Source of the DNA: Girardia tigrina
Taxonomy: Eukaryota
Direction: 5' to 3'
NCBI GenBank assembly: GCA_001938485.1
Contig: MQRK01218689.1
Span: 9,258 to 66,293 of the forward strand
Length of the DNA: 57,036 bases
Numbering within the stretch: the stretch's first letter is position 1; every line of letters begins with the position of its first letter. Of the stretch, positions 8,546 through 54,709 are shown piece after piece. Below the pieces are notes generated by a model. The model did no database searches. It saw nothing but the letters and a program-made list of their open reading frames with translations, and was not told the DNA's origin. The position numbers and the translations under genes were made by a program.

Positions 8546-11500
8546 TGTAAGAGAAGGTTGTTGTTAATTTTTTAATTTTCAGATATAAGAATTTTGGTTT
8601 TTAAAAATTTCGAATTATAATCGAAATTAAAAAAATAATAGAAAATAGAATTAAAAAAAAAGAAAATAAAAAAAGAAAATTTGTTTAAATAACAAATTTA
8701 AACTGTTGTAGATTAATAAATTTTGCAAGTTTTTATTTTTTTTGATTTAGAATGGAAGATAATTCCCAACCTAACATGGTGGCAGCGGTAGCGGATTCAA
8801 TCACGAACCGACTGATTCCAGACATATTCCAGATCGGAGAAGACCTTGAGAAATTTATTTCTCGCTGCAGAAGATATTTTGAAGCAGGGGAAATTAATCA
8901 AAAGAAATGGCAAACATGTATTTATTCAATGATACATGAAGATCTCTTGGAAGCATATGAGAACACAGCTGGTAAAGCTGATAATTTTGAGGATCGGTGA
9001 AGACTAGCGCTTGGGAAGCCGAGAGCGGCCGCGACGGATTGGGAAAAAACTGTTGAATTATCGCAATAGTGCTGATAACGCACAAACCTTTTTCAAAAAA
9101 GTAGACCGTTTGGTAAAAAATGCGTTGTCGCAAATACTCGAGGAAGAAGAGCTAAAAGCTCAAATGTTAATTCATTGCTTTGATGATGAAGATGTTATTC
9201 GTGTAATTAAATTACGGAAACTAAAGAATGCTAAGTAAATATCTGAGTTCGTTGCACTCGAAGACGAAATAAACCACGAAAAGAAGAGCAGGATCAATGC
9301 TGTCCGAAGTTATCGAGATGTGGTTCAAAACAGCAGGGCTCCTGAGATAACTAAAAAAAATGATTAAATCAGACTCAGCCGTGAAAACAACTCTCAAGAG
9401 TGGAATCAACCGAGTCCAAATGCTATACTTGTCAGCAACCAGGACATTTCAGCAGAAATTGCCAAGAAAGCAGATCTGTGCAGTGTTGGAATTGTAAAGA
9501 GACTGGGTACATCAGTCGAAACTGTCCTAACAGACAGCCATTGGTTTTTTTCTTGTGCGGATAGAAGGGACATAGGCGAACTCAATGTCCAGAGATACGC
9601 TGTGGAAAATGTGGTCGGAATGGGCATCTAGCAGCGGCATGTTTAGTGAACTTTAGCATACAGAATAATGGTTACGACAATGGAAGATCGAGAATGCAGA
9701 ACAATGATCGAAAATTTAAAATCAACGCAATGAACGAAGATCAAGAACGCATATTTGATGATAATGAAGAAAAAAACGATAAGACGTACCCAAACTACTG
9801 GGCTCCACCAATTGGAGAGTTGGTGGGAGCCGAGTGCCACTGATCATAGAAGATAATTCCCACGTAGTCGCATGCGAGCTGGATGTGCGAACGATGAATT
9901 AGGTCTATGGATTTGTGAGAAGAATTTTGAGCAACTATTCTATGTTTACGCATTGATTGAGGATCAGAAATCAGAGATATGTTATAGTAAAATGCAGGGG
10001 CGTCCGAGTGTTACAGTGGAAATTCAGGAGAAACAGTGGAAGTGTTTGTTGGATACAAGAGCATTTGTTAATGTTATGAATAAGATGTATTATCGAGATT
10101 TGAATAATTTGGTGTTAAAAACTGCGATATCAATTTGAGAGGTACCAACGATGGAAAATTGAAAGTATTGGGTAAAACAGAGGTAGAAGTAGATATATGT
10201 CAGACAAGGAAAGCAGTACCATTCATAGATGTAGAGAGTGTGGTTCCGGAACTGATAGGAGGCATAGTATTCATGAAAATTTTCGGTTATTCCATACAAA
10301 GGAACGAATCTCAAGACAATAATGTATCAAGGGAAGCACGTGGAAGTGTGTGCAACATTGAGGTGAAATTCGGCAGGGTGATAAGGCCAGAAGAGAGATT
10401 AAAAAGAGCGTCAGATTGCATAGGTAAAATAGATTCAAAACTGTTAATGGTCATTCAGAATCAGGCAGAAGTATTCATGGCTGATAAATGGGATATCGGA
10501 TGTACCAGTTTACCAAAACCTCATATTTAGACGAATGGAGAGCCAATTAATTTAAAACCTTTTTGTCAACCAATGCATCTCGAAGAAAAAATCATGGAGA
10601 CTATAAAAAATTTGTGTGATAATAATATCATTCGGAAGTGTAATTCACCTTGGAACACACCATCAGATGTTGGCACACGTGAGTGTAAGAAAAGTTGAGT
10701 ATTATTTAAGAACTCTAAGGATTTTGACAAGCTGAAAGGTAAGATCAAAGAGATTGTACGGAGTTGTGAATCATGTCAAAAGTATAAAACATATACGGCA
10801 AAGACAAAAGAGAACACGATAAAATTAGAAGCTGTCGAGGTTTTCGAATGTATTTATGTAGATATTTTTGGACCGTTGAATGAGACTTCTGCGAAAAAGA
10901 AATATATTCTAGGCATCATTGATCAGTTCAGTAAATACATTATGTTATTAGCAATGTCGAAACAAGATGAGGAGTCGATAATAAAAGGAGTAATGCGGAA
11001 TTGGATACTGAAATTTGGTTTTCCCAAGGCGATGAATGTGGATTGCGGAGGTTTTTGAATCAAAAAAGATGAAAGAGTTCGCAGAGAAACAGAATTTTGA
11101 AATTAGATTCTTCAGCCAATATCATCATAACACAAACGGACAAATTGAACGACAATTCCGTACAGTGAGAGAATTGATTAATGCAACATTGCATGAAAGA
11201 AGAAGTTCCGACTGGGCTGTGATTCAACCGGAAATCGAGTTCTCATTAAATGCCACATTACAGATGACTATCAGGATGAGTCAAGTTGAAATCATTTTCG
11301 GAAGACGTATTAGCAGGGAGAAATGGGATGGAAAAAATAGCAAGACATTTCAATATGAGCGGGACCAGGAGCCTATCACACGAAGACAATTCTTCCCAGG
11401 AGATGATGTATTGGTAAAAGTAGAATCTAGAACAAAAGATCAAGGGAGATACGACATGCCATATAAAGTAGTTCGAAAACTACGTGATAGAAGATATGTT

Positions 11501-11770
11501 CTTGAAGATATGTCTGGTAAAACATGTGAAAGAAATGTGGAGAAAATTAAAAAATTCTTGCGTGCAGGGGTATCAGAGAGTGTTGTTATTAATTTTTTAA
11601 ATTTCAGAAATAAGAATTTTGGTTTTTAAAAATTTCGAATTATAATCGAAATTAAAAAATAATAGAAAATAGAATTACAAAAAAAGAAAATAAAAAAAAA
11701 GAAATTGTGTTTAAATAACTGTTTAAATAACTGTTGTAGATTAATAAATTTTGCAAGTTTTTTGCAAGTT
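8546..11770 (+). mobile_element. Gypsy LTR retrotransposon lacking RT/RNase H (gag-PR-IN)
   Basis: 5' LTR 8546-8776 (TG...CA). 3' LTR from 11571, truncated at ~11770 by the LINE. Gag with four CCHC-type knuckles (9420-9645), protease CLLDTRA (~10050), integrase core (GIIDQFSKY...NVDCG...NGQIERQFRT, 10876-11629). Confidence 0.92.
8777..8789 (+). promoter_or_regulatory. Primer-binding site complementary to tRNA-Leu 3' end
   Basis: tggtggcagcggt immediately after LTR ...ctaaca; complementary to the ...ACCGCUGCCA-CCA end of metazoan tRNA-Leu. Confidence 0.75.
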
Positions 11771-14700
11771 TCCACAAACATTGAAAAGACTGTCCATCAT
11801 CGTTGCAAACGAATCCAAAAAATGCTTATAGAGGTGTTAAGAGTAATATTGTGGAGCATGACGCGTGCAACTTACGAGTAGAGAACACCTTCTACAAACA
11901 TAAGTTGGCGCAGAGAACTAGCTGGATACACCCGTCAACGAGAAAAAGACTGCTACTGGACTTATTCCTGTCGCAAAAGAGCAGATGCAACAGGATAAGC
12001 AATGTCAAAAGCTACCCGAATTTTGACTGCGGCTCTGACCACGACTTAGTCGTGTTAACGATATGGATCATCAACAACAATAAGGTGCTCAAGTTGGCAA
12101 ATGATAGAAGAAAGAAAAGAAAAGGAAGAATTGACAGATTTTCCTTGCTGAACAACAAAGTGGCCATCAGTAGTGACATAGGACAGGCTTGTCCGAATGT
12201 TGTGAGATGGGATGATGTGGAGAAGGTCATTTTGAAGACCTCAGAAAGATACAGAAAGAAAAAAGTCCNNNNNNNNNNNNNNNNNNNNNNNNNNNNNNNN
12301 NNNNNNNNNNNNNNNNNNNNNNNNNNNNNNNNNNNNNNNNNNNNNNNNNNNNNNNNNNNNNNNNNNNNNNNNNNNNNNNNNNNNNNNNNNNNNNNNNNNN
12401 NNNNNNNNNNNNNNNNNNNNNNNNNNNNNNNNNNNNNNNNNNNNNNNNNNNNNNNNNNNNNNNNNNNNNNNNNNNNNNNNNNNNNNNNNNNNNNNNNNNN
12501 NNNNNNNNNNNNNNNNNNNNNNNNNNNNNNNNNNNNNNNNNNNNNNNNNNNNNNNNNNNNNNNNNNNNNNNNNNNNNNNNNNNNNNNNNNNNNNNNNNNN
12601 NNNNNNNNNNNNNNNNNNNNNNNNNNNNNNNNNNNNNNNNNNNNNNNNNNNNNNNNNNNNNNNNNNNNNNNNNNNNNNNNNNNNNNNNNNNNNNNNNNNN
12701 NNNNNNNNNNNNNNNNNNNNNNNNNNNNNNNNNNNNNNNNNNNNNNNNNNNNNNNNNNNNNNNNNNNNNNNNNNNNNNNNNNNNNNNNNNNNNNNNNNNN
12801 NNNNNNNNNNNNNNNNNNNNNNNNNNNNNNNNNNNNNNNNNNNNNNNNNNNNNNNNNNNNNNNNNNNNNNNNNNNNNNNNNNNNNNNNNNNNNNNNNNNN
12901 NNNNNNNNNNNNNNNNNNNNNNNNNNNNNNNNNNNNNNNNNNNNNNNNNNNNNNNNNNNNNNNNNNNNNNNNNNNNNNNNNNNNNNNNNNNNNNNNNNNN
13001 NNNNNNNNNNNNNNNNNNNNNNNNNNNNNNNNNNNNNNNNNNNNNNNNNNNNNNNNNNNNNNNNNNNNNNNNNNNNNNNNNNNNNNNNNNNNNNNNNNNN
13101 NNNNNNNNNNNNNNNNNNNNNNNNNNNNNNNNNNNNNNNNNNNNNNNNNNNNNNNNNNNNNNNNNNNNNNNNNNNNNNNNNNNNNNNNNNNNNNNNNNNN
13201 NNAAAGTTCTCTGGGATTGCCTTCAAGGAATTGGAATACAGGATCGGATGCTAAGTATCATCATGAAATTTCATGAAGGTTTCACGGGAAGCATTGGAAA
13301 GGATAAATTCAGTATGGACAATGGAGTCCGTCAGAGTTGCGTATTGGGTCCTCTACTATTCAACCTTGTCATAGATCATGCAATTAAGACCGCCATCAAG
13401 GAAGGACTATCAGGTGGTGTGAAACTAAAATACAATGGGGAAGAGCTGACCGTGAACAGACTTGCTTATGCAGACAACCTGTGCTTACTGGACGAAGACT
13501 ATGCAAATATCGAACGGAATATCACGTGTCTCAACACTGTGTTCTTGAATATGGGGCTCAAAATCAACATTGGGAAAACAAAGATCCTGAATCTCAATGG
13601 AGCAAAGTACATTACGGCAAGAGACGAGCTGAATGCCGGAATAGAATGGGTGGAGGAATTCTGCTACCTGGGATCGATAATTGAAAGGAGAGGAAGCTCA
13701 GGTACGGACATCAAAGCCAGAAATCAGAAAGGAGCAGCGAAATTACGGACGATCAGACCAGTGTTGAAGAACAACAAATTGTCTCTCCGGAATAAGAAGA
13801 ACATAATTAGCAGCTGTGTATTCCCGGTAATTTACTACAGCTGTGAAAATTGGAGGACAAATGAAGTACACGTGAAAAAGCTAAAAGCATTTCACATTCT
13901 ATGCACTCGGCGAACTTTGGGGATTTCGAAAGCCGAAAAGATTAAGATGGATGAGATATCAATTGGACTGCAAAGCCCAATGGATATCATCGCACGGAGA
14001 AGAATCGTACACAATACCAAGGTCGATTTAGGAGAATGCCCGGAGAACGTCAAGCAGATCAGTGGATGCGAACTCATCAGAGGAAGAAGATCAGCGGTCG
14101 GAGAAAGCAACATCTGGTAGAATGTCTCAGAGTGGATGCTCACTGGCTCTTTGGAGCCGAGTACAGTTTCGGTGAATTTAAAAGAGACGTTCTGCAGGAA
14201 AACTTACTGAAGATGGATGGAAAGATCGAGAAAGTATTCCGACTGAAGAGAATCCAAAGAAGCGGGGACGAGCAAACACTAAGACTGATGCTACCTCGTC
14301 TGAAAGAACAAAGCTGCCCGATGGATGCCTGTCATAGACAGTATGCAGAAGTGAAGGAATTGAACAGGCATCTCAGAATAGATCACAATGGAGCAGGCCC
14401 AATTCCGCGAAAACAAAGAGAAAAAAAAGCCCAGCCACGTCAGAAGAAAGGAAAATATCAATATCAACACTGCCCGAGGGAATACAAGGCCGCTGGTTTC
14501 TTAAGGATTCATATTCAGAAGAATTATCAAGAAGTTCCAACATCCAACGCCCAGAGAGAAGAAAACTTGGAAGAAGAGAACCAGGAAGAGCCGACATCAA
14601 ACCAATTCAATCCTCAGTTGCCGGACGCAACTGTGAGTATGCCGAGGATACAGCAGAACGACAATGCCGAAGAGACGCACCTACAATACCGACTGCCAGC

Positions 14701-14970
14701 CGATTACAAGACTGCAAGAGGACAATTCAAGTGCCCATTTCGCGGTTGTTACGCGTCCACCGTAACAGCCAACGGCATGTACGGCCATGGTACCAAGTTC
14801 TATGGTTGGTCGTTCATTACTGGCAAGCCGACTGCTCAGAGGCGGAAGGCCACTGACCCCATAGGAGGCCTATCGGGGGGCCCTTAAGGACTTTAGTTTG
14901 GGTGGACCCTCTAAAGAGCCTTAGGCTCAATACCATTACAGAGATGGGAGGCCCACATTGTGGAGCATAG
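11771..14970 (+). mobile_element. RTE-like non-LTR retrotransposon (APE-RT plus C-terminal C2H2 fingers), spans assembly gap
   Basis: APE C-terminal motifs (SWIHPST...LLDLFL...CGSDHDLV), RT (GVRQSCVLGPLLFN, LAYADN, GLKINIGKTK, FCYLGS), then a shifted ORF 14036-14887 with C2H2-like motifs. YADN instead of YADD suggests an inactive copy. Confidence 0.88.
12269..13202. other. Assembly gap (N run)
   Basis: Ns. Further gaps at 47311-47430 and 52347-52396. Confidence 1.
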
Positions 14971-42450: not shown

Positions 42451-43341
42451 AGCGAATAAATTAAAAATAGTAAAATATAGTTTAAATATTTAATTTTTAA
42501 AATATAGTTCGATTTATCTTTTTATGGACTTTAAAATGATACCAAATGTCGCAAATGAATGCTAGATTTAAATGATTTGGTAAAACAAAAACTTTAATTC
42601 ACAAAAAACATGAATAACTTTTGAATCAACCTGGTATGTGCAATCCACGAGGAAAGTCAAATAACAAATGAATTTAGTTTAGTTGTCTTAATAAATGAGA
42701 AGGACTTAAACTGCTAGGCATAGTTGGTTTACTTTCTTTTTCTTTATTATGGTCTAAGCATTTATTACACAACTCAAAAGGAATAACCAGACGAACGTTG
42801 CCGATTCACGGAGCATCGAAATAAATGTATTGATTTTCTCTAATTTCAACGAGTCATTTTTGCTTTCTTGTTTGTCTTTCAAATCTAAAAAAAGTTTACG
42901 ATAGGATTACGAACTTATACTAGTTATAGGGATATCGGAGCACAAATGAGCTACATCATTTATGCCGTTCATTACTGAATGTCGACATTGAATTGTGTCA
43001 AAAATGAAGTTTGGTTCACTTTCCTTGGTCTTGGATCTTTCAATACCAAAACTTGAACAGAAAATACAAGACTTTATGTTCATCAACATTCTTTAATTGC
43101 ATGAACAACATTAAAAATTGAGTGAAACAAATATTTGTAGTGTAATAAATTTAGATGAAAATCGATCATAACAAATAATTCTTATGTGTTTTCAATGATC
43201 AATTTTAAGTGTTTCAAGATTTATATTCATTTTAACATTTGCTTGTATCACCATCAAAGTGTTTAAGGTTGAATGATTCTTTTTTATTTTTTTTGTGATA
43301 TCAATTGATTATTTTATTAATATAAATATTTATGAAAGTTT

Positions 43342-43991
43342 ATGGAAATAATTCAGTTGATAATTTTGCTCTTTTCCTGTTTTATTTGCCATTGTGAAAC
43401 GCCCGCCTCAATTTGTGGGGACCCAAGATTTCCATACAAAACGCCGGATAATTATTGTGCTAATTTTAGCGAAATTTGCTTTAAGAAAGGTTTGTAAGTT
43501 TCTTTTATTAAGTTTAAATGTTCATAAAAAATTCGTTTTAATAGATTTGTTAAAAGTTTTTTAATTATTGTTTATACAGATGATCCGACCTGTAATAATT
43601 TTCAAAATATCTGTAAACGTAAGTTAAATTAGGCTTTATTCATATAATAACTATAATGCTTACAGATTGTCCCCCCAGTAATTACAGTACAATAAGTAAT
43701 CAAATTATACTTATAATTAAATTATATTATTGTAACAAAAATCAGTGTTTAATGACCTGCAGAATCTTAAAAGTAAGATTAATTTTATTATTTCATAAAC
43801 TGTTTATCAATATAAATAAATAATTAATTATTTTTAGTAGAACTTTAATAAGTAACTTTTAAATAACATTTATTTGATAAATTATTATTTTTCAGTCACA
43901 ATTTTAAGTATTTATATCTCTTACTATGTTAACCAAACAACTAATCAAACATTGATTGTTACTAACGTTAGTTTCCGTCGTCTTATTTTAA
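43342..43991 (+). CDS. Putative micro-exon gene for a small Cys-rich secreted or membrane-anchored protein
   Basis: Exons 43342-43489, 43580-43618, 43666-43695, 43746-43772, 43896-43907, 43972-43991, all phase-1 GT-AG junctions. Translation MEIIQLIILLFSCFICHCETPASICGDPRFPYKTPDNYCANFSEICFKKDDPTCNNFQNICKHCPPSNYSTIMFNDLQNLKITILISVVLF*. Confidence 0.6.
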
Positions 43992-44049
43992 TGAAGTGTG
44001 TAATTACTATTAATGAATAAGTATAATCATACCAAAAATTTTTTTAGTG

Positions 44050-44393
44050 TACAAGCTTTTATAATTTATCATATTTTTGCGGTTCTGTATCTAATTCACC
44101 CACTATTATCAAAGCCTACTTGGCGAAAACCCGCTATCTATTTGCATTTAGATGTAGCAAATTTCAAAGCCTACTACTGAGGAAAATATGAGAACGACAC
44201 TTTAATTACTTTTTGCGGCCAAACTAAAGGCGGTAGATTAGCAGTGACAGTGAAAAAGTGTATTGTCACCTAGAATACATCAGTCCTGAAAGTTTTATGT
44301 CGCTAGGTGAACGAGAAGCGGGTGAATTTTCGACCGCAAGATTTGATACATCAGACAGACAAACAAACAAATGAAATGTAATAAAAGCTTGTA
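44050..44393. mobile_element. Non-autonomous element with short inverted ends (tacaagcttttat) and (acag/acaa)n microsatellite; second copy 47153-47512
   Basis: Two related copies with an internal caaagcctact repeat. DINE/HINE-like or MITE; family uncertain. Confidence 0.7.
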
Positions 44394-44481
44394 AAAATAG
44401 AATTTATGATATAAAAACGTTTTACAGATATTTTGATTCTTTTCATAGTTTAATTAGTTTTTATTAAATTGATTTCGTAAT

Positions 44482-44720
44482 TCAAATTTTTTTGGCAAAC
44501 AATTGGCAATGAAGACGCTTTTTAAGGTAGTTAAACAGAAAAAAAATGGAGATAGCTAAATCGGGGCTGTATAATGGGTGGTGGAGCAAGTTGAGCCCGC
44601 AACTTTCAATTGTGACCATTGAAACGCTGCTGATGTTGATAAGAGCAATGTCGAGTAAAAAAATAGATATCACAGTTGCTGCTCTTTTATCATGCTTTCC
44701 TTGCTTGCTGCAAGATGTTG
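44482..44720 (-). mobile_element. mariner catalytic-domain fragment
   Basis: CGLNLLHHPLYSPDLAISIFFLFNYLKKRL. Confidence 0.75.
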
Positions 44721-45364
44721 GAGTAGTAAGAACTATTGATCTTCACGCTGGATTGAGCAAAGTCAGTCACGTATATATTTTTACATTAAAGTAGGGAGAA
44801 CCAATAGTTCTTTCTGATGTTTTCAACAAATTAAAACGATTTTTAAACAAATAAAAAACTATCAGGTTTTAAAGTAAAGACGATTTAAATCAAAGGCTTG
44901 AATACATGCATCAGCAAGTTTAATTATACCACTGCAATATAATTCTTTGTTTTAGAGTTCAATGGTAACAAGATGTTTCATCTTTCATTGGGTTTGTCTG
45001 GTGATGTGTACTTTTGCGTTGTCTTCATGCAAAAAAGAGTTTACTTTTGATTGGTCAATGTGGTGTATTTTTTGTCAAGCGTTGCAGGCATCAAATCAAG
45101 TTTGATGAAATATAGGTCATTTTCGAGATTTAAAATATTTTTAAGTGACTCAACGTGAATTTCGCTTTCAAAATCAAACACACAAAAGTACCTTCCATTG
45201 AGATCGATCTCGTTTTGAAACCATTTTAACGATTTTATTGATAAAAACTTATTAATTTTTGTACAAAAAATCTTTGTTGTTTGTGAACTCGACTGTTCTA
45301 AATTTTAGTTGTTTTAGTTTTTGTTGCGTAGCAACAGGAAAAAATTGTTGTTAATTGATAAATA

Positions 45365-45760
45365 ATGGTAAAACTTGAGAAAAAACATTTTAAAAATTTT
45401 TTTTTCAAAAATCTCTGCAAACGATTCCAAGAACACAGTCGAACTTATGGTAATAGTAATATTGCTGATCATAGAAAGAAATGTAAAAGTAGTTTTGAGA
45501 TAAATAATTTTAAAGTTCTGTGTTCAAATTTTGCAAATTATTGGGAGAGAGTTGCGGGTGAGGCTTTATTAATCAGGACCCACAATCCTTAAATAAATTT
45601 TCAAGCGACAATCTCAACCAATTTATTAAAGTTATTTAATTAAATAGCAATTACTTTATTTGATTACATAATAATTGCTTCCATATATATACGTTATTTT
45701 GATCATTATTGGTTTTGTCTGACGATGATGGGTGATCCGTCGAAATTGATAAATGTTTTA
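45365..45760 (+). mobile_element. PLE 3' fragment (GIY-YIG C-terminus) with hammerhead core
   Basis: RFQEH...SNIADH...NFKVL...EALLIRTHNP*IN; ctgacga-t-gatgg-gtgat-ccgtc-gaaa at 45719-45745. Confidence 0.75.
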
Positions 45761-45964
45761 AAAATATCTGACTACAATTGCCTCCAATGGAGGAGCGAAT
45801 CCTTATGAGTCTGGTTGCATTTCAACCCTTTCTGAACATCAATTCTTTCAGTAAATAAACCAAATATGTCTACTTAAATATAGATGACTTTGGTACAGTT
45901 TTTGGGAATTCTAAATAAACTCTATTAAGTTTGTAATAACAAAATGTTTTTTAATTTAAAAATA

Positions 45965-46068
45965 TTAGGTGTACAACTAATTAATTTCGTATTTGTTATC
46001 ACTTTTATACTTAAATAAATGGTTTTTTTAACAAAAAAAAATACGAAATTAATTAGTTGTACACCCAA
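45965..46068. mobile_element. 104-bp mariner-derived MITE
   Basis: About 30-bp TIRs ttaggtgtacaactaattaatttcgtattt, TA on both sides. Confidence 0.85.
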
Positions 46069-48762
46069 TAATTATTATTTAGTAATAAGAAAAGAATATA
46101 TCGAATTAAAGTAAAGTTATAAGTTTGAAATAAAATAAATGTTATTTTTAAATTTTAAAGTAATTTGATAATAAAAATATGGAAAATAAACAAAATTAAA
46201 TATCGATTTTGAAAATTAAAATAAATGTCAGTGAAACGAGTACTAAAAATAAATCTGAAAATTCGTTTGTAATAAAAATTATTAATTTAAAATTATTAAT
46301 TTGTAAATATTGTGCTAATTTAAATGAATTTAACTTCGAATATCGAAAATGATTTCAACGCAACTAACATTATTTTTTTGGAGAATGACTTTAAGTATTA
46401 TTTACTCAGATTAGAGAAACAAGAATATAACTGTAAAAAAGTATAAATCTAAAGGAGATTATTGAGAGAAATAAATATTAATTTGAAGTAAAAATTGCCG
46501 TCTCATTGTGAAATAGGAAACTCTTCAGATAACAATAGCTTGAATCCTGCTACCCACTATACTTACATTTGGTCTGCATTCTCCAAAAATGAGATTCATA
46601 AAATATTATTTGTGAGAATATTTTTTATTTCTTCTAACATGCATAAAATTTTAGTTTTATCATGATTTGAGTATGCAATCTTTATTTATTTGTTCTTGAA
46701 CAATTTGTATCTTAAAAGTTTAAATATTTATCATTTATATTCTAGATCAAATGAACGTGGTTATGTCAAACGTTAAAAAATTTGAACAAATGATGAACAA
46801 TATAAGTAAAAGTCAAATTTGATCAATATTTCTTAATTGTTTTAAAATAATGACCAACTTAATACATATCATTAAGCCAGTGACATTTTCTTCTGAAATC
46901 TCTTTTACTAGCAGAATTGTCTTCTTGCTTCGTATTTACAAATCTGTGTAAATTCCCATTAATTACAGTCAACGAAAGCTATCATCAATTTAGATTATTA
47001 CCTAAATTAAGATTAAACCTAAAATTTTTATATCTGTGGGAAGTTTATTGCACTTTTTTAAAATTCAATCAATATATTAATTATATAAATAATTAAAAAT
47101 TTTAAAATGGTAATATGATTATCTAATAATCTTACCAAAAAAATTTTGGTTTAAAAGCTTTTATAATTTGTCCCATGTTTGCGGTTCTGTATCTATTTCA
47201 CCCACTTCCCACATTTTGTGACTGAATTATCAAAGCCTACTAGGCGAAAACCCGCTTTCTATTTACATTTAGATGTAGCAAATTTCAAAGCCTACTACTG
47301 AGGAAAACATNNNNNNNNNNNNNNNNNNNNNNNNNNNNNNNNNNNNNNNNNNNNNNNNNNNNNNNNNNNNNNNNNNNNNNNNNNNNNNNNNNNNNNNNNN
47401 NNNNNNNNNNNNNNNNNNNNNNNNNNNNNNNAACGGGAAGTGGTTGAATTTTCGATCGCAAGATTTGATGCATCCAGACAGACAAACAAATGAAACGTAA
47501 TAAAAGCTTGTAAAAATTGGCTAATCTTTATTAAGGTGTGGTAACTTTATTCTTTTCAAAATGTTATTTGTAGTAAACATTGTAAAATAAAACACACATT
47601 TTAAATTTTTATTATGAAAACGCCAAAAAGTTCTTATCTAAAATAAATCCATGTGACGGAACATCAGACACCCATACATCAAAGAAGAATTTTTAATTTG
47701 TAAATATTGAGTTAAATAAAAATGAATATTGAAAAATTGAATTCTTTACATCAGCTATTGAAGTAAATTTAAAATTCATTATTTGAAACTGTCGCAATTA
47801 TTTTTTATTCAATTTAAAACATATTCTACATTCAAAAGATTTATTTAATGTCCAGTTTTCCAAAATATTTTCTCACACAATCAATCTAACAAACAAAAAT
47901 ACAATTTTTTACTATATATCGATTTTTTTTTAAATTAACATAAAATTTTTTCAATGAATCAAATAAGTTTTATTGATCTTTATTTGTCAGTTTGATAGTC
48001 CAAATGAGGAATGTTTTGAATTGTGTGTTGATTCGGATTGTGCCTCTCCTACCCAGATGTATGATTGGTATTTTCTTTGATTCCTACTAATTAAAAATAA
48101 TTTAATTTAATTTTAAAGTAAAAAGATTTAAAATAATTTTTGCATGTAATATTTAATTTTTAATGTAATTTAAAATTTGTATATATTAATTTAATATGTA
48201 CATTTTTTTTAAATGTTTAGATTTAATTTTAACCAATTAGATTCTTTATAATTAATAATTTTTATTAAAAGATTTTTATTTATTGAAAATAATTAGTACG
48301 AATTCAGAAATATATTGATCAAGGAAAATGTCAAATAGTGAAGGAGTTTGTGATAATAATAAATGTTTAAATACTCATATTGATGTCGTTAATAGTCCAG
48401 ATTCGTCACAATTTTTGGTTAATCAATTTGACTCGACCAGATATAAATAATAAAAGATATAATAATAAAACTAAAGCACAGAATTTTTAAAAATTTTCAA
48501 AGTATATCATAAGTAAGGATTCATTACTTAGTTTTGATAAATATAAAAAAGAATGATCGTTCTGTTTCTCAAACTTAAATTTGTTGTAAATCAATCAACT
48601 TTACTTATTTATTTCAGAATAATATTTTAAATGTTCTAACGCTCACTAAATAATGAAAAATAATTCGTAAAAGATTATTTTTTAAAGATTTGTAAAGCAA
48701 ATTTTAAATTTTTTATGCAACAACTTTAGCTTGATGAAAGTAAAATATTCAACCTTTTAGGT

Positions 48763-51016
48763 CAGTGGTTCCTAACCTGGGGGTAATTACCACCAGGGGG
48801 GTAAAAACGTAATTCTTTAGGGGTAAAAAGGCATCCAATAAATTTTAGTGATGCCTTCTTTGTTAATAAAAAAATACAGTACAGTAACGCATTTGGTTCA
48901 TGTGCCATATACTCTTTATTGTTATCGAAACTGCGTGTATAAACCAGTTTGAACTGAGGGTGGTTGAGCATGTATTCCGACGCATTATCGCGTTTGAGCT
49001 CCACAATGCGCACACGCGATGCACAATGGGGATTCACGAATATTCTAGATAGGAATGTGGAAAAGCCTCAGTGTGTTCAATGTAATAAAGTGCTTAATAC
49101 AGAGAGCATGAAGCCGAGCAAATTAAAAGAACATTTCGAGAGAGTTCACAAAGAGTTTGCAGATAAAGATATAGATTTTTTTAAGAGAAAAGAGAGTTTT
49201 CTGAAGTCTGTGCGATTTGATTCAACAGGAAATATGCAAAAGGCAAGTGAATCATATCTTCAAGCTTCATATCAAATTTCTTATCGTATTGCTATGAACA
49301 AAAAACCGCACACTATAGGAGAGGATCTCACCAAACCTTGTTTGTGTGATGCAGTATTACTCGTCTTTGGTGAGAAACATGTGGCTGAGATCAAACAAAT
49401 ATCACTTTCAAATACTATAGGTCAAAGCCGCATTTCAGACTTGAGTAACGATATTATGGCAACCATTTTAATGAAATGAAATAAGTTCTATGTTTGCACT
49501 GCATTTAGATGAGTCTACAGATGTAGTTTTGTGTTCATAGCTACTGGCATTTACACGTTATATGAAAGATGACTGTGTAAAAGAGGAATACCTGTTCTGT
49601 AAATCATTATCCACCACTACCAGTGGAGAAGACATTTTCGAAACGCTGAAACAGTTTATTGAGGAAAACGGTCTGGACTGGTCAAAGCTGGTCGGTATTT
49701 GTACAGACCTTCCATGGTGGGCGTCCGCTCTGGATTTCAAGCACTCGTGAAACAAGTTGCTCCTCAAGTTTTATCCTATCATTGTCTCATTCATCGCTAC
49801 GCTTTGGCTGTTAAGACGCTTCCACCAGAATTACTAAGCACGCTGAATGACATAGTGAAAATTTTGAACCATGTTCGTGGCAATGCAACAAACACCAGAT
49901 TATTTAAAGTTTTATGTGATGAAGTTGGTGCTAAATTTAACTTTCTTTTGTACCACACAGATGTACGTTGGTTATCATGAGGCAGGGTTTTGAACAGGGT
50001 TTACGAGCTCCGTGAAGAAATAGGATTATTTTTTGAAAAACAGAAAACACAAAAAAGAAAAAGAGTATCTGTCAAAAATGAAAGACAAAACATTTGTTGA
50101 AAAGCTAGTGTATCTTACTGATTTCTCCAGTGAAATCAACAATCTTAATATTTCTTTGCAAGGAAAAATGACGAATATTTTGAGAGCTTAGGATAACGTT
50201 GCCGGTTTTGTACGTATATTAGAACTTTACCAACGCAGAGTGCAAACTGGCGATGTGTCGATGTTTACACAACTCTGTGAGCAATTATCAAATACCAAAG
50301 TCAGCAAAATCACATTTAGAAATGCGTGGCTCAACATTTATCTACAATAATAGAGTCACTGAAGCAATATTTTCCGGATTTGGATAATTGTCAGTCCAAT
50401 TCTTGGATATTAAGATCCTTTTCTACTGTTGATGACATTTTTAAAGACGAGGATGTAGCGGCCAAAGTAGAATGTCTAGGACTCCGCGAGAATAGTACTT
50501 TTAAAGTAGAATTTCAAAATTATGATCTCTGCACATTTTGAATTAAAGCAGGTACCGAATATTCTGTTATAGCCAACAAAGCTTTAAAAATGCTGTTACC
50601 CTTCACCACCTCTTATAGATGCGAGAGTAGTTTTTCAACTTTAGTTTCATTGAAAACAAAGCTCAGAAGCCGTCTCAATGTGGAACAATACTTGAGATGC
50701 GCTTTAAGTGACACTAAACCTAAAATAAAAAAACTTGTAAATTCAAAACAATTCCAACCTTCATACTGAATATTTTTAAATCATAGTTAAAATATAAAAC
50801 AAAGTAATATTGTAATACTGTTTTGCAATTTGTGTTTTTCTATTTATTCACAATGTATCCAGTTTTCTGAAGAACTACTGGCAATGACAAATTTGTAATT
50901 AATAAACATTTAAATTCGCTTGCATTGTGTGTTTTTATAGCATTTTTAAGTTGGGGTAAAATCAGTTTTCCTAACAGGTTACAGGGGTAGCAGCATAAAA
51001 AGGTTAGGAACCACTG
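48763..51016 (+). mobile_element. hAT Buster/Charlie-type DNA transposon, full length, decayed
   Basis: 16-bp TIRs cagtggttcctaacct, perfect 8-bp TSD ttttaggt. BED finger (PQCVQC...MKPSKLKEH), LDESTD, HCLIHR, HTDVRWLS, PFTTSYRCESSFS. Confidence 0.95.
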
Positions 51017-51953
51017 TTTTAGGTTTATCGTGTAAAAGAAGAAATTTTATAAATATATTTCAATTTAGATCAATTGAAAAACAATTTTCTATTGGTTGCA
51101 AATAAAACAGGTAAAAGAAAATGGAAAAATATTTATTTAATCAACTTTATTTTCAGTCCAATCAAACATAGAAATATCAGAAAATAAAAGTAAATTATTT
51201 TTAGTTTATATAATACTAAGAAATAGTAGAAGGTTCTGATTACAAATATGGCATACGTACAAGGTTGGCCAACATTAGGGCTACAGTTAACAATTTAACT
51301 TTTCTTTTAATAGAAAATTAGAGATTTGTTATAATTGGATTTAAATATTTAACATTTTTAAATATTTAATTTCTCAAGTATTAAAAATGCTTATGAGATA
51401 TTTCGACAAAGTCTGACGTATTTCTACAAAAATTTGGATCTTGATCATTATAAAATAATCCACGAAAAATGTAATTTTTCAGTTTTTTATTGTAAGTGGA
51501 TTAGTTAGTTTATTATATTTTTTAAGAGTTTAACAAAACTATTTTCATTGAAAAATTAATATAATTTGTTTTAAAATTACTATAAATTTGTACGTACAAA
51601 TTTGTAAAGGTGTGGAATGCAATAACATTTTAATAACTTTACTTACATTGAATTATACTTGGAAAAATATATATGTTCCGATGGTTTCTATGGACATGGA
51701 ATAAGTTAGAAATTGATCAAATTAATATATTCTATACTAAAATTGATGATGTATAAAATAGAAATGGTTCAAAGATATAAATTTTGGATTACTGAACTAA
51801 TTTCAACTAATATCAACAAAAAATAATAATTTCAACATAGGAATTAATTTCAACAAATATGTTTTATTAATTATTTTTCAAACTATTTGTGAGTGTTCTG
51901 ATTATGTTATATGAAATAAAAAAGATTTTATTCAAAAAAAATTACATATAAAA

Positions 51954-54709
51954 TGTGAACGAGAATAACTAAAATAAGGATTTATTTCAATAACAAGATG
52001 TACAAACCATTCACCGAATTCTGATTATTAAAACAAGTTTTCGACGTTTCCACTACAATCTCCCTTGCCTTCAAGGCACAAAGCAAACTCCTTCTGTGCA
52101 CTGTAGATTCTCGCTCGGATCTGGTTTTGTCACTCCTGTACACACATAATCTGCAAATCTTGCCGGCCGAAGGGTCGCTCGATTTGGCCTCGGTTGCCGC
52201 ACCTCGTCGGATTGAGTCTGACAGTTTTTAACAGCATCCCTTATGCTATTTAATGTCTGTTCGTCCTCTTCGTCTTAGCTGAATCCAATCTTGGTGGACA
52301 AAAGTTAGAAACAACATCCGATATTTAGACAAGATTGGATTTCAAANNNNNNNNNNNNNNNNNNNNNNNNNNNNNNNNNNNNNNNNNNNNNNNNNNAAGT
52401 CATCTAGTGAAAGTCTTACACTATCAGCCGCCGAAAAGAAAACACTGTCTTTCCAATTCCACAGGCTGTACCATCATAAAAAATTTGTGGACTGGTTAAA
52501 GCAGTCGAGTGCGAGAAAATCTGCTGATGCATTGTGCAAGGATAAAATGTCCAGCCAAGTGCTACATGATAGTAGCCTGACAGAAACAGAATGGCGATTT
52601 ATTCATCAGGCCCGAACGGGGAATCTTTCAGTTAACTACAAGCCGAAGAAACTTAAGGAAAAGACATTGTGCCGAGCTTGCCGACAATATGTTGAGACAC
52701 AATTACATGTCCTTTGTCGCTGCAAATCAAACATAGCACTTGTTACTGCACACCATAATTCCGTACTTGACCTGGTTGTCGAAGCAATAGACATTGAACC
52801 TCACTATTACGAGATACTAACGGATGAACAAAGTAACTTTTCATAATCAGTAGAAGAATCGATCTGCAAATCAAAAACACTGGCAGAAAGACTCTATGGC
52901 TAATCGATATCAAAACACCATATGATGAAACGCAGAATTTAAAGTCTACCAGATAGCTTAATGAGACAAAGTACGAATCACTTGAAGCTGAAGCAAAGGG
53001 AAAATTCCAAGGTTTGGGTGTCAATCTTAGGACAAAAGTAGTTGGATGTCTCGGCTCCTTGCAAAAGAAAAACGATGAAGTACTCCAAGACCTAAATTTG
53101 TCGGATATTGCCATCAACAACCTACGAAAAAAAATGCGTTATATCCCACATCAAATACTGCTCATCGACATGGGCGAAACACAATATCAACTGTTTCAAC
53201 CCATGCTCAAGTTCCATGGAAGCTCCAGTCAACTCAATGCTGGAACGGATTCTAACTATGGACACTTAATGACGCAGTAATCAAAAGTGATCCTCTTTCT
53301 TTGGTCCTTTGAGACCTATTTCTTGTTTTACTTTTTTATTGAAATAAAATTTAGTAAATCAACCTTTCCCCATTGCCTGCACCTGCTTCTCAGTTATTCA
53401 CCCTGGACCCCACAATTTCCTCGCAAAGAACATCATCCACTTCCCCCAAAATCGTGGATAGCATGGAGCGCCTGCAGACTATCTATCGGCTACCCCTCTC
53501 CCTTCATCGTTACTGCCGGCACATTCGGTCAATCCTTTGACGCTATCAGCCAGTCACTAGGTACGTGAGTGAGGCGATTTGCTAGCTTTTATGCTGAACT
53601 GACCAATTTCCACTCCACCCGAAGCGGCCCCTCTTCGATAGTCTGCTTGATTGTGCACATGCATCGCTTTACGAGCAGCTCGCTCATTCCCCTGGATCTA
53701 ACCGTTCATCGCCCCTCGTAGCGTTTGTCAACCACCGGAACACAGTGGAAGAGTTCGTTATAATCTTGATGTTTTTTAATCCCCATGCGACTGCTGCATT
53801 TATTGCCGTATTAGTCACTTCAAGTTCTGCCAGGTTGATATGAGCGGTGTCATCGTCCTTGCGAAGCCACGAAGCATCCTCGACCACCGCTCCCCTATCT
53901 CTACAAAGATACCGGTCGCGATCGAACTGGCATTATACCCCACTTGACCGTATTTTCGGTCGGGTACTTCCCACATGTAGTTCACCAGCATTTCAGCGCA
54001 GACCAGGCTTTCTACGGTGTGGTTGGACACGAACGCGTTTAAGGCTCTGTAGTCTAGCACCGATCGCATCTTTCTCTTGGTCACCTGAACCACCGCCATC
54101 AGAGGCAAAATTGCCTTTGCTTTCCAATTAAACGGGATGAGCCACCCGTTTTTCTTCCATTCAGAAAACCCCTAGCTCCCCTCTTCTTTGTACCGCTTTG
54201 CCGACGCATATGCAACCGCTCCCCCAAGCCAATCTGTTGGCTCCTCACCGCTCCTCCACTTCCATAATGCCGTCCACGAGCGGCTGTCAAACTCAGCTAT
54301 AAAATCAGAATCCTCAATCCTCGTGCGTGCTGGTTGCTTCGCTCTGCCCACCGCTACCTGATGTTCAATCGGTCCAAACTTTTGGACGCCGCCTCTGCTA
54401 GGCACCCACACGCCCCTAAATTAGTCACTGAATTCACGATATATGACTGACGCCTTGCCGTCAGTGCAAGCGGCAATATCACCAGCTTGTTCTCCTTAAG
54501 CGTATCCGCGCACTCGTGGTATCACTCGATTCAAATGGAAAAATCCCCACGCCCGTCATACGCCGGCACGATTTTTGGAGTCTTCATCACAAAGCCGCGA
54601 TAGCTTGTGAACGAGAATAACGAAAATAATGATTTATTTCAATAACAAGATTTACAAACCGTTCACCGAATTCTGATTATTTAAACAAGTTTTCGGCGTT
54701 TCCACTACA
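51954..54709 (-). mobile_element. Short-LTR retrotransposon (104-bp LTRs), internally deleted
   Basis: LTRs 51954-52057 and 54606-54709 (TG...CA, 6 mismatches), 5-bp TSD taaaa, PPT gaaggcaagggaga. Pol remnants DFIAEFDSRSWTALWKW, PLMAVVQ...VLDYRALN, VEDASWLR...HINLAELE. Confidence 0.9.
52210..53355 (+). mobile_element. NeSL/Utopia/R2-like non-LTR retrotransposon 3' fragment (restriction-like endonuclease)
   Basis: EWRFIHQAR, CRAC...ETQLHVLCRC (CCHC), HHNSVL, RRIDL...LIDIKTPYD, KYESL. 5' limit approximate because of a gap. Confidence 0.8.

What the first reader, a model, noticed from the sequence alone, without database searches (positions are those of the whole stretch)
43342..43991. Hidden micro-exon gene: signal peptide, Cys-rich repeat and symmetric phase-1 exons of 39, 30, 27 and 12 nt
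Seen: absent from the ORF track. Exon 1 encodes a signal-peptide-like stretch. Internal exons are all multiples of 3 and phase 1, so each can be skipped in frame. CANFSEIC (exon 1) recurs as CNNFQNIC (exon 2). Exon 3 has three in-phase GT donors (12, 21, 30 nt), the last intron has a TACTAAC branch point, and the protein ends in hydrophobic ITILISVVLF. An optional 14-nt exon (43838-43851) would stop it at KIEL*, removing the tail. Known: schistosome micro-exon genes diversify secreted proteins by skipping symmetric exons. Inference: an analogous combinatorial surface or secreted protein system with a soluble versus anchored switch.
Basis: partly seen in the sequence, partly recalled or inferred. 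Interest (0 to 1): 0.78.

Follow-up and report, generated by a model that had tools for sequence, protein, structure and literature searches.

The report
Expressed micro-exon gene, hidden flatworm family

Summary
The 5' two thirds of the finding are confirmed. Spliced contigs from four public runs (three studies) join exon 1 (ATG 43342 to 43489), exon 2 (43580-43618, 39 nt), exon 3 (43666-43695, 30 nt) and exon 4 (43746-43772, 27 nt) at GT..AG borders.

The exon-1 peptide has at least 86 six-frame matches in its own 1.43-Gb genome. Of 67 distinct loci examined, 47 keep a 39-nt and a 30-nt phase-1 exon, usually followed by a 27- or 30-nt exon.

The 3' third is not supported. After exon 4 the transcript reads ATC, which fits neither the 12-nt exon, nor the 14-nt exon, nor the short last exon. 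No contig lies on 43858-44005. The true 3' end is unresolved; my best candidate is a 60-nt phase-1 exon at 46746-46805.

Only one splice form was seen. Exons 2 and 3 carry structural cysteines and the exon sizes are fixed across paralogues, so the micro-exons look constitutive rather than combinatorial.

Only two relatives exist among 1.84 billion representative proteins, and both have a transmembrane helix. A resemblance to single-domain TNF-receptor modules is a lead only.

The scan's notes describe a similar family on other DNA of this genome (s1-716890); I could not show that it is the same one.

The parts
43306..43341 (+). 5' untranslated part of the transcript. It contains an out-of-frame upstream ATG at 43332.
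   Evidence: Contigs of X1 and X6 begin at 43307 and 43306. The ATG at 43332 opens a 21-codon ORF.
43342..43489 (+). Exon 1 coding part (148 nt, ends in phase 1). It encodes the signal peptide plus ETPASICGDPRFPYKTPDNYCANFSEICFKK.
   Evidence: Contigs of four runs cover it without differences. The joint 43489>43580 has GT..AG ends. It is homologous to at least 86 loci of the same genome.
43490..43579 (+). Intron 1 (90 nt)
   Evidence: Skipped in X1, X2, X6 and X5, with GT..AG ends.
43580..43618 (+). Exon 2, 39 nt, phase 1 to phase 1, encoding DDPTCNNFQNICK
   Evidence: The 39-nt size and the C-x6-C motif are kept in 47 of 67 paralogues.
43619..43665 (+). Intron 2 (47 nt)
   Evidence: Skipped in X1, X2 and X6, with GT..AG ends.
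43666..43695 (+). Exon 3, 30 nt, encoding HCPPSNYSTI (sixth Cys and an N-x-S sequon)
   Evidence: The 30-nt size is kept in 47 of 67 paralogues. In X5 the exon differs by two synonymous AGT>AGC changes (table 7).
43696..43745 (+). Intron 3 (50 nt)
   Evidence: Skipped in X6, with GT..AG ends. X1 and X2 carry an exon-4 variant directly after exon 3.
43746..43772 (+). Exon 4, 27 nt, encoding MFNDLQNLK
   Evidence: X6 matches exactly; X1 and X2 carry a variant with one codon changed from CTG to ATA (L to I). A 27-nt exon with the F.D.QN.K pattern recurs in paralogues.
43838..43851 (+). Not supported.
   Evidence: The AG..GT string is present. No joint leads to it, and the contig reads ATC, not TAG, after exon 4.
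43896..43907 (+). Not supported.
   Evidence: The string is present. Depth is zero in all four runs, and it starts with TC, not ATC.
43972..43991 (+). Not supported.
   Evidence: Depth is zero in all four runs. No counterpart was found in paralogues.
44035..44400 (.). High-copy interspersed repeat inside the stretch downstream of exon 4. A second copy lies at 47137-47517 and is interrupted by N.
   Evidence: More than 2000 first-look candidates at 85-92% identity in the genome. Direct copies shown. Very high contig depth.
46746..46805 (+). Best candidate for the true exon 5 (60 nt, phase 1 to phase 1, encoding NQMNVVMSNVKKFEQMMNNI). Inferred, not shown.
   Evidence: It is one of three AG|ATC sites in 43773-50000. 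It has a pyrimidine-rich acceptor, an open frame and a GTAAAA donor.
45203..45255 (+). Weaker alternative continuation after exon 4 (AG|ATC, then 17 codons and a stop)
   Evidence: The acceptor is poorer and no AATAAA lies nearby.

Best explanation
The locus is a real, transcribed gene of a large lineage-restricted family. The scan's own notes call the genome a planarian flatworm.

SHOWN
- Exon 1 and three constitutive symmetric micro-exons (39, 30 and 27 nt, all phase 1, separated by introns of 47-90 nt) are spliced together in RNA-type contigs.
- The same exon sizes and phases recur in dozens of paralogues that are only 40-55% identical in protein.

INFERRED
- The product enters the secretory pathway.
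- The signal peptide is cut before the conserved Glu (C-x-[GAC]|E).
- The six cysteines (C-x13-C-x6-C-x7-C-x6-C-x2-C) form three disulfides in a beta-hairpin followed by two short helices. Each helix carries one C-x6-C pair. The two pairs are the repeated CANFSEIC and CNNFQNIC, so exon 2 looks like a duplicate of the end of exon 1.
- The N-Y-S site of exon 3 is glycosylated.
- The module works outside the cell as a binding domain, either soluble or tethered, depending on 3' exons that are still unknown.
- The micro-exons are fixed structural pieces, not optional cassettes.

The transcript continues with ATC after exon 4, most likely from a 60-nt exon about 3 kb downstream, beyond a transposon-filled intron.
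For: -: joints 43489>43580, 43618>43666 and 43695>43746, all GT..AG, in contigs of X1, X2, X6 and X5 (three studies). There are no differences over exon 1. X5 has two synonymous changes in exon 3, and X1/X2 have one conservative codon change in exon 4. These differences fit purifying selection.
- 86 six-frame matches of the exon-1 peptide in the genome.
- of 67 distinct exon-1 loci, 47 have a 39-nt exon with C-x6-C and a 30-nt exon starting xC. These are followed by a 27-nt exon in the subfamily of this gene, or a 30-nt exon in a second subfamily. Introns are 41-100 nt.
- invariant C25, P31, C39 and F42.
- the only true relatives among 1.84 billion representatives, P0004 and P0008, have the same signal peptide and six-Cys layout, followed by a hydrophobic helix.
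- AlphaFold model of P0004, mean pLDDT 80.6, with a hairpin at 31-39 and helices at 41-47 and 50-61.
Against: - The runs are only guessed to be RNA. The removal of three GT..AG introns is the argument that they are.
- The 3' end, the stop codon and the poly(A) site were not found.
- No transmembrane-type exon lies within 9 kb downstream or within 1.2 kb in 40 paralogues. So secreted versus tethered is open.
- Recent paralogue pairs share only about 100-120 nt beyond exon 4. This could mean very short 3' exons or truncated copies.
- Disulfide pairing, glycosylation and signal-peptide cleavage are inferred, not tested.
- The joined exon 1-4 protein was not searched or folded.
Confidence: 0.8

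Rival explanations
1. This is a schistosome-MEG-like diversification system: the symmetric micro-exons are skipped in combinations to vary a secreted protein, and an optional 14-nt exon switches between a soluble form (KIEL*) and a form with a hydrophobic tail (ITILISVVLF).
For: - All internal exons are multiples of three in phase 1, so skipping would keep the frame.
- In-phase GT sites exist inside exon 3.
- Contigs of three runs stop at or just after exon 4, which could reflect a branch in the assembly graph.
Against: - Only the full 1-2-3-4 form is seen in four runs.
- After exon 4 the contig reads ATC, which matches neither the 14-nt nor the 12-nt exon. Depth is zero on 43858-44005.
- Exon 2 holds two cysteines and exon 3 one cysteine of a six-Cys module. 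Skipping exon 3 leaves an odd number.
- Exon sizes are invariant in paralogues, unlike variable cassettes.
- The inner GTs of exon 3 are simply AGT serine codons, one of them in the sequon.
- Ten hydrophobic residues are too few for a membrane span.
Confidence: 0.06
2. It is a transcribed but decaying copy. Exons 1-4 are an intact 5' cassette whose original 3' exons were lost or displaced by transposon insertions, so the transcript ends in fortuitous sequence and makes no stable protein.
For: - The 3 kb after exon 4 holds high-copy repeats.
- No conserved 3' exon could be found.
- Young paralogue pairs share only the 5' cassette plus about 110 nt.
- An upstream out-of-frame ATG lies in the leader.
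Against: - The reading frame of exons 1-4 is intact.
- Differences between organisms A, B and C are synonymous or conservative.
- All family-invariant residues are kept.
- Expression is seen in three studies.
Confidence: 0.1

Closest known systems
Schistosome micro-exon genes (MEGs)
   Same: - It is a flatworm gene, and a signal peptide sits in a longer first exon.
- A run of very short symmetric exons (multiples of three, same phase) follows.
- The gene is missed by gene finders.
- It belongs to a multigene, lineage-restricted family. The MEG description I used is from the abstract of bioRxiv 10.1101/2023.06.21.545858 and from my own knowledge of DeMarco et al. 2010.
   Different: - Only 96 nt of the known coding sequence lie in micro-exons, against 148 nt in exon 1.
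- Introns are tiny (47-90 nt), not long.
- The micro-exons encode a conserved disulfide-bonded module rather than variable, mostly Cys-free peptides.
- No exon skipping was seen.
- No sequence similarity to any described family was found.
- By the scan's notes, the animal is free-living.
Single-domain TNF receptors (Drosophila Grindelwald, Fn14, BCMA, TACI CRD2)
   Same: - The relative P0008 is a 244-residue protein with a signal peptide, one small Cys-rich domain, a stalk, a membrane helix and an approximately 80-residue tail. That is the Grindelwald layout.
- The predicted hairpin plus two antiparallel helices matches the description of the Grnd ectodomain in PMC8024323.
- Language-model look-alikes are Grindelwald, TACI/BCMA and TNFRSF12A clusters.
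   Different: - Cysteine spacing is C-x6-C on each helix, not the C-x3-C of the C2 module or the C-x2-C of BCMA and TACI.
- No Pfam or PDB sequence match was found.
- Foldseek found no TNFR.
- Atlas scores of 0.76-0.82 lie in the range that shuffled proteins often reach.
- For the window's own gene, no membrane or cytoplasmic exon was found.
Pneumocystis major surface glycoprotein Cys repeat (Pfam PF02349 MSG)
   Same: P0004 residues 35-63 match the repeat at E = 3.6e-4, 21.1 bits.
   Different: - The score is below the curated cut-off of 22 bits.
- Only one of 20 family members matches.
- This is most likely a shared cysteine spacing and nothing more.

Membership tests
Schistosome micro-exon gene (MEG) class | Most of the coding sequence is made of symmetric micro-exons (about 6-36 nt, up to 81 in a recent re-annotation) flanked by longer end exons | tested here: inconclusive
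   Three symmetric exons of 39, 30 and 27 nt are confirmed. They make up 96 of the 244 known coding bases. The 3' part of the gene is unknown.
Schistosome micro-exon gene (MEG) class | Signal peptide in the first exon | tested here: met
   The hydrophobic N-terminus is followed by a conserved C-x-[GAC]|E site across 28 paralogues. No SignalP tool was available.
Schistosome micro-exon gene (MEG) class | Protein variation by skipping of micro-exons | tested here: not met
   Only one joined form appears in contigs of four runs. Contigs drop rare variants, so a minor isoform is not excluded.
Schistosome micro-exon gene (MEG) class | Sequence relation to a described MEG family | tested here: not met
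   The profile of 28 exon-1 peptides found only P0004 and P0008. Pfam gave no MEG family.
TNF receptor superfamily, single-CRD type | Cysteine-rich domain with canonical module spacing, recognised by family profiles | tested here: not met
   The spacing is C-x12/13-C-x6-C-x7-C-x6-C-x2-C. There is no hit to PF09305, PF09257 or PF12191. The PDB sequence search found nothing.
TNF receptor superfamily, single-CRD type | Fold of a beta-hairpin followed by a disulfide-nested helix-loop-helix | tested here: inconclusive
   The model of P0004 has that order of elements. Foldseek against the PDB gave no match with E below 2. The wide search was swamped by the long helix. An ectodomain-only model could not be made under the input rules.
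TNF receptor superfamily, single-CRD type | Type I membrane protein with a cytoplasmic tail that binds TRAF adaptors | tested here: inconclusive
   P0008 has a membrane helix and a tail. For the window's gene and 40 paralogues no such exon was found. TRAF binding cannot be tested with these tools.
Pfam PF02349 MSG repeat | Score at or above the curated cut-off | tested here: not met
   21.1 bits against a cut-off of 22, in one member of 20.

The most novel reading that the evidence does not exclude
The family is a flatworm-specific expansion of single-domain TNF-receptor-like proteins of the Grindelwald/Fn14/BCMA type. Its ligand-binding domain would be encoded by a fixed set of micro-exons and would be invisible to gene finders. 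These proteins would be the missing cell-surface (or decoy) partners of the greatly expanded planarian TRAF adaptor repertoire reported in PMC6109357.
Probability: 0.18. Interest if true: 0.8.

Novelty: new variant of a known kind. Interest (0 to 1): 0.6.

Why it matters
- **Annotation.** A family of at least 67 loci encoding secretory-pathway proteins is represented by only two sequences among 1.84 billion protein clusters. Standard annotation of this genome, and probably of other flatworm genomes, therefore misses a sizeable part of the extracellular proteome.
- **Origin of MEGs.** The gene shows that chains of symmetric phase-1 micro-exons are not peculiar to parasitic flatworms. Here they encode a rigid disulfide module instead of variable peptides. 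This bears on how schistosome micro-exon genes arose.
- **Signalling.** If the TNF-receptor-like reading held, it would give testable candidates for the receptors upstream of the expanded planarian TRAF family.

Tried and rejected
1. **Word-based protein searches.** I tried the exon-1 ORF, P0004, and a mixed alignment. They found nothing beyond P0004 and P0008.
2. **Source of the two relatives.** P0008 is not on record in the contig collection. It is not encoded in this genome; the best match is 47% identity over exon 1 only.
3. **A downstream block shared with three paralogues.** Translated comparison pointed to 47986-48412. It turned out to be a high-copy repeat with 2382 candidates at 91-94% identity, so I rejected it as an exon.
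4. **Transmembrane exon.** No convincing hydrophobic stretch lies in any forward frame of 43773-53000. None lies in phase within 1.2 kb of exon 4 in 40 paralogues. Mapping P0004 and P0008 onto eight extended loci gave only exons 1-3.
5. **Paralogues of the candidate 60-nt exon.** Only the exon itself was found.
6. **Apparent intron-less copies ('3 TAA inside').** These are ordinary genes whose in-frame first intron was read through by the search.
7. **Fold searches.** Foldseek gave only weak LDL-receptor class A rows with E above 2. The wide search returned coiled coils because of the long helix.
8. **Rfam.** Nothing in the window.
9. **Similarity of the 43896-44020 open frame to the C-terminus of P0004.** I saw it by eye, but it did not appear among the tblastn hits. 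I dropped it as an effect of AT-rich composition.

The exons were handled one by one by reference.

Full report
**What is in the sequence**

The window is AT-rich (18-43% G+C). At 43342 an ATG opens MEIIQLIILLFSCFICHCETPASICGDPRFPYKTPDNYCANFSEICFKK, followed by G|GT.
- AG|39 nt|GT at 43580-43618.
- AG|30 nt|GT at 43666-43695, with further GTs after 12 and 21 nt.
- AG|27 nt|GT at 43746-43772.
- A 14-nt piece at 43838-43851 and a 12-nt piece at 43896-43907.
- TACTAAC at 43960-43966, and a short open piece ending with TAA at 43991.

**Transcript evidence**

One search for public runs returned nine runs. Six hold part of the stretch, none holds more than a quarter of its words, and none is on record as DNA. 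A share of a fifth to a quarter is what a spliced message would give.

I laid four of the runs (X1, X2, X6, X5; three studies, three organism labels) on 42600-44800. Contigs run from 43306/43307 through exon 1 without a difference. They then skip 43490-43579 (all four runs), 43619-43665 (X1, X2, X6) and 43696-43745 (X6). Each skipped stretch has GT..AG ends.

In X5 the contig continues after exon 2 with exon 3 carrying two synonymous AGT>AGC changes. In X1 and X2 it continues after exon 3 with exon 4 carrying one codon changed (CTG>ATA, Leu>Ile), followed by 35 more letters that begin ATC.

Removal of three canonical introns is also the argument that these runs are RNA.

- ATC after exon 4 fits neither the 14-nt exon (TAGAAC...) nor the 12-nt exon (TCACAA...).
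- No contig of any run lies on 43858-44005.

Only three AG|ATC sites exist between 43773 and 50000.
- The site at 46746 has a pyrimidine-rich acceptor. It opens a 60-nt stop-free exon in phase 1 that ends at a GTAAAA donor. This is my best candidate, but it rests on three letters plus splice-site quality.
- The site at 45203 is a weaker alternative.

I could not lay reads there because the tool's single call was used. The roughly 3 kb between exon 4 and 46746 contains a high-copy interspersed repeat at 44035-44400. A second copy lies at 47137-47517.

**A large family with the same architecture**

The exon-1 peptide has 86 six-frame matches in the 1.43-Gb assembly, and the best paralogues are 55% identical. 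I fetched about 90 loci and traced exon chains by script.

Of 67 distinct exon-1 peptides, 47 are followed by a 39-nt phase-1 exon with C-x6-C and then a 30-nt exon beginning xC. Three that one search lists as 36 nt were 39 nt; the difference comes from where my script placed the exon-1 donor. Introns are 41-100 nt, apart from a few longer first introns.

Two subfamilies appear:
- This gene's subfamily (P[YF]KT...CANF.[ED]IC) has a 27-nt fourth exon with the pattern x[FL]x[DE][IL]QN[LV]K.
- A second subfamily (PFR.SDS.C) has a 30-nt fourth exon such as ILNRILDTLK.

In five young copies of the second subfamily, a 33-nt phase-1 fifth exon (DNKVKEDEQFR) is also visible.

Invariant residues are C25, P31, C39 and F42. 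The repeat CANFSEIC/CNNFQNIC is a family feature. Some genes lie in pairs, either inverted or tandem.

**Why the micro-exons look constitutive**

- Only the full form is seen.
- Exon 2 carries two cysteines and exon 3 one cysteine of a six-Cys module, so skipping exon 3 leaves an odd number.
- Exon sizes do not vary among paralogues that have diverged to 40-55% identity.
- The inner GT sites of exon 3 are AGT serine codons, one of them in the N-Y-S sequon.

Contigs cannot exclude rare isoforms.

**Relatives elsewhere**

A profile of 28 exon-1 peptides against 1.84 billion representative proteins gave nine hits. Two of them, P0004 (120 aa) and P0008 (244 aa), align from the signal peptide across the whole profile. 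I read two of the other seven (P0001, P0009): both are repeat proteins that match the profile only over short stretches. The remaining five I did not read; they match about 25-30 profile positions, repeatedly, inside proteins of 1,063-3,189 residues.

Each of the two relatives is a singleton known only by a UniParc number. Three word-based searches added nothing. P0008 is not encoded in this genome.

Both relatives have the signal peptide, the same cysteine layout and the equivalents of exons 2-4, followed by a hydrophobic helix. P0008 also has a stalk and an approximately 80-residue tail. At least some members elsewhere are therefore predicted type I membrane proteins, although these are unverified gene models.

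In this genome I found no membrane-type exon downstream of the window's gene or of 40 paralogues. Young duplicates share only about 100-120 nt or about 570 nt beyond exon 4. Several paralogues have a good acceptor soon after exon 4, followed within a few codons by a stop and AATAAA. Secreted versus tethered therefore stays open for this genome.

**Fold and the TNF-receptor lead**

AlphaFold on P0004 with a shallow alignment gave mean pLDDT 80.6. The model has a hairpin at 31-39, helices at 41-47 and 50-61 (each carrying one C-x6-C pair), and then one long helix.

- Foldseek against the PDB gave nothing below E = 2.
- The wide search was dominated by the long helix.
- Pfam gave only a sub-threshold MSG hit for one member.
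- The PDB sequence search gave nothing.

The protein-language-model atlas placed P0008 next to Grindelwald, TACI/BCMA-like and TNFRSF12A clusters (scores 0.77-0.80). It placed its ectodomain alone next to TACI-CRD2 and BCMA clusters (0.76-0.82). The tool itself says that shuffled proteins often reach these scores.

The Grindelwald ectodomain is described as a hairpin followed by two antiparallel helices with nested disulfides (PMC8024323). That is the same order of elements, but the cysteine spacing differs. TRAF adaptors are greatly expanded in planarians (PMC6109357). I treat this as an untested lead with a probability of about 0.18.

**Organism and earlier notes**

I did not establish the organism myself. 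The scan's notes call it a planarian flatworm. One follow-up (s1-716890) describes about 55-60 hidden genes for small surface proteins built from very short pieces, possibly receptors. That may be this family. The look-up by sequence was blank. Another note (s1-691890) reports a micro-exon mucin with only one spliced form.

**Limits**

Exons were handled by reference one at a time.
- N runs (47312-47431) were left untouched.

**Verdict**

It is a new variant of a known kind, of moderate to good interest.

Noticed in passing
window 43332-43397: An out-of-frame upstream ATG lies ten bases before the main ATG. It is inside the transcribed leader (contigs start at 43306/7) and opens a 21-codon ORF that overlaps the start of the gene. 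Translation of the main frame would need leaky scanning.
   Followed up: no
window 44035-44400 and 47137-47517: Two direct copies of an approximately 380-nt interspersed repeat with short inverted ends (TACAAGCTTTTA... / ...AAAGCTTGTA). The genome holds more than 2000 first-look candidates at 85-92% identity. Contig depth in the RNA-type runs is very high (up to about 1300).
   Followed up: partly
window 47986-48412: Another high-copy repeat (2382 first-look candidates, 91-94% identity). It contains exon-like open pieces rich in Cys (FDSPNEECFELCVDSDCASPTQMYDW). It lies downstream of three other family genes in the same orientation.
   Followed up: partly
window 45952-46081: A 46-nt inverted repeat with a 38-nt spacer, looking like a miniature transposon. 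A near-identical element sits downstream of a paralogue (L055:3260-3360).
   Followed up: no
L050-L054 (G000 contigs C104759, C249061, C65244, C155386, C180535): Five copies of one subfamily-B gene are 91-94% identical from upstream of the ATG to a common end point about 570 nt after exon 4. The shared 3' boundary suggests that they spread as a defined unit.
   Followed up: partly
L018 / L043-L044 (G000:C239698) and L055 (G000:C218527): Family genes occur as a divergent inverted pair about 2.1 kb apart and as a tandem pair about 2.2 kb apart. The family is thus partly clustered.
   Followed up: partly
window 13248-14120: An ORF with a reverse-transcriptase domain (PF00078, E = 2.5e-9), part of a retroelement spanning about 11000-14900.
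   Followed up: no
L009:2280-2480 (G000:C218462): A tandem array with a unit of about 22 nt (CCCTAGCAACGGTCGCGATCAC-like), inserted after exon 1 of a paralogue.
   Followed up: no
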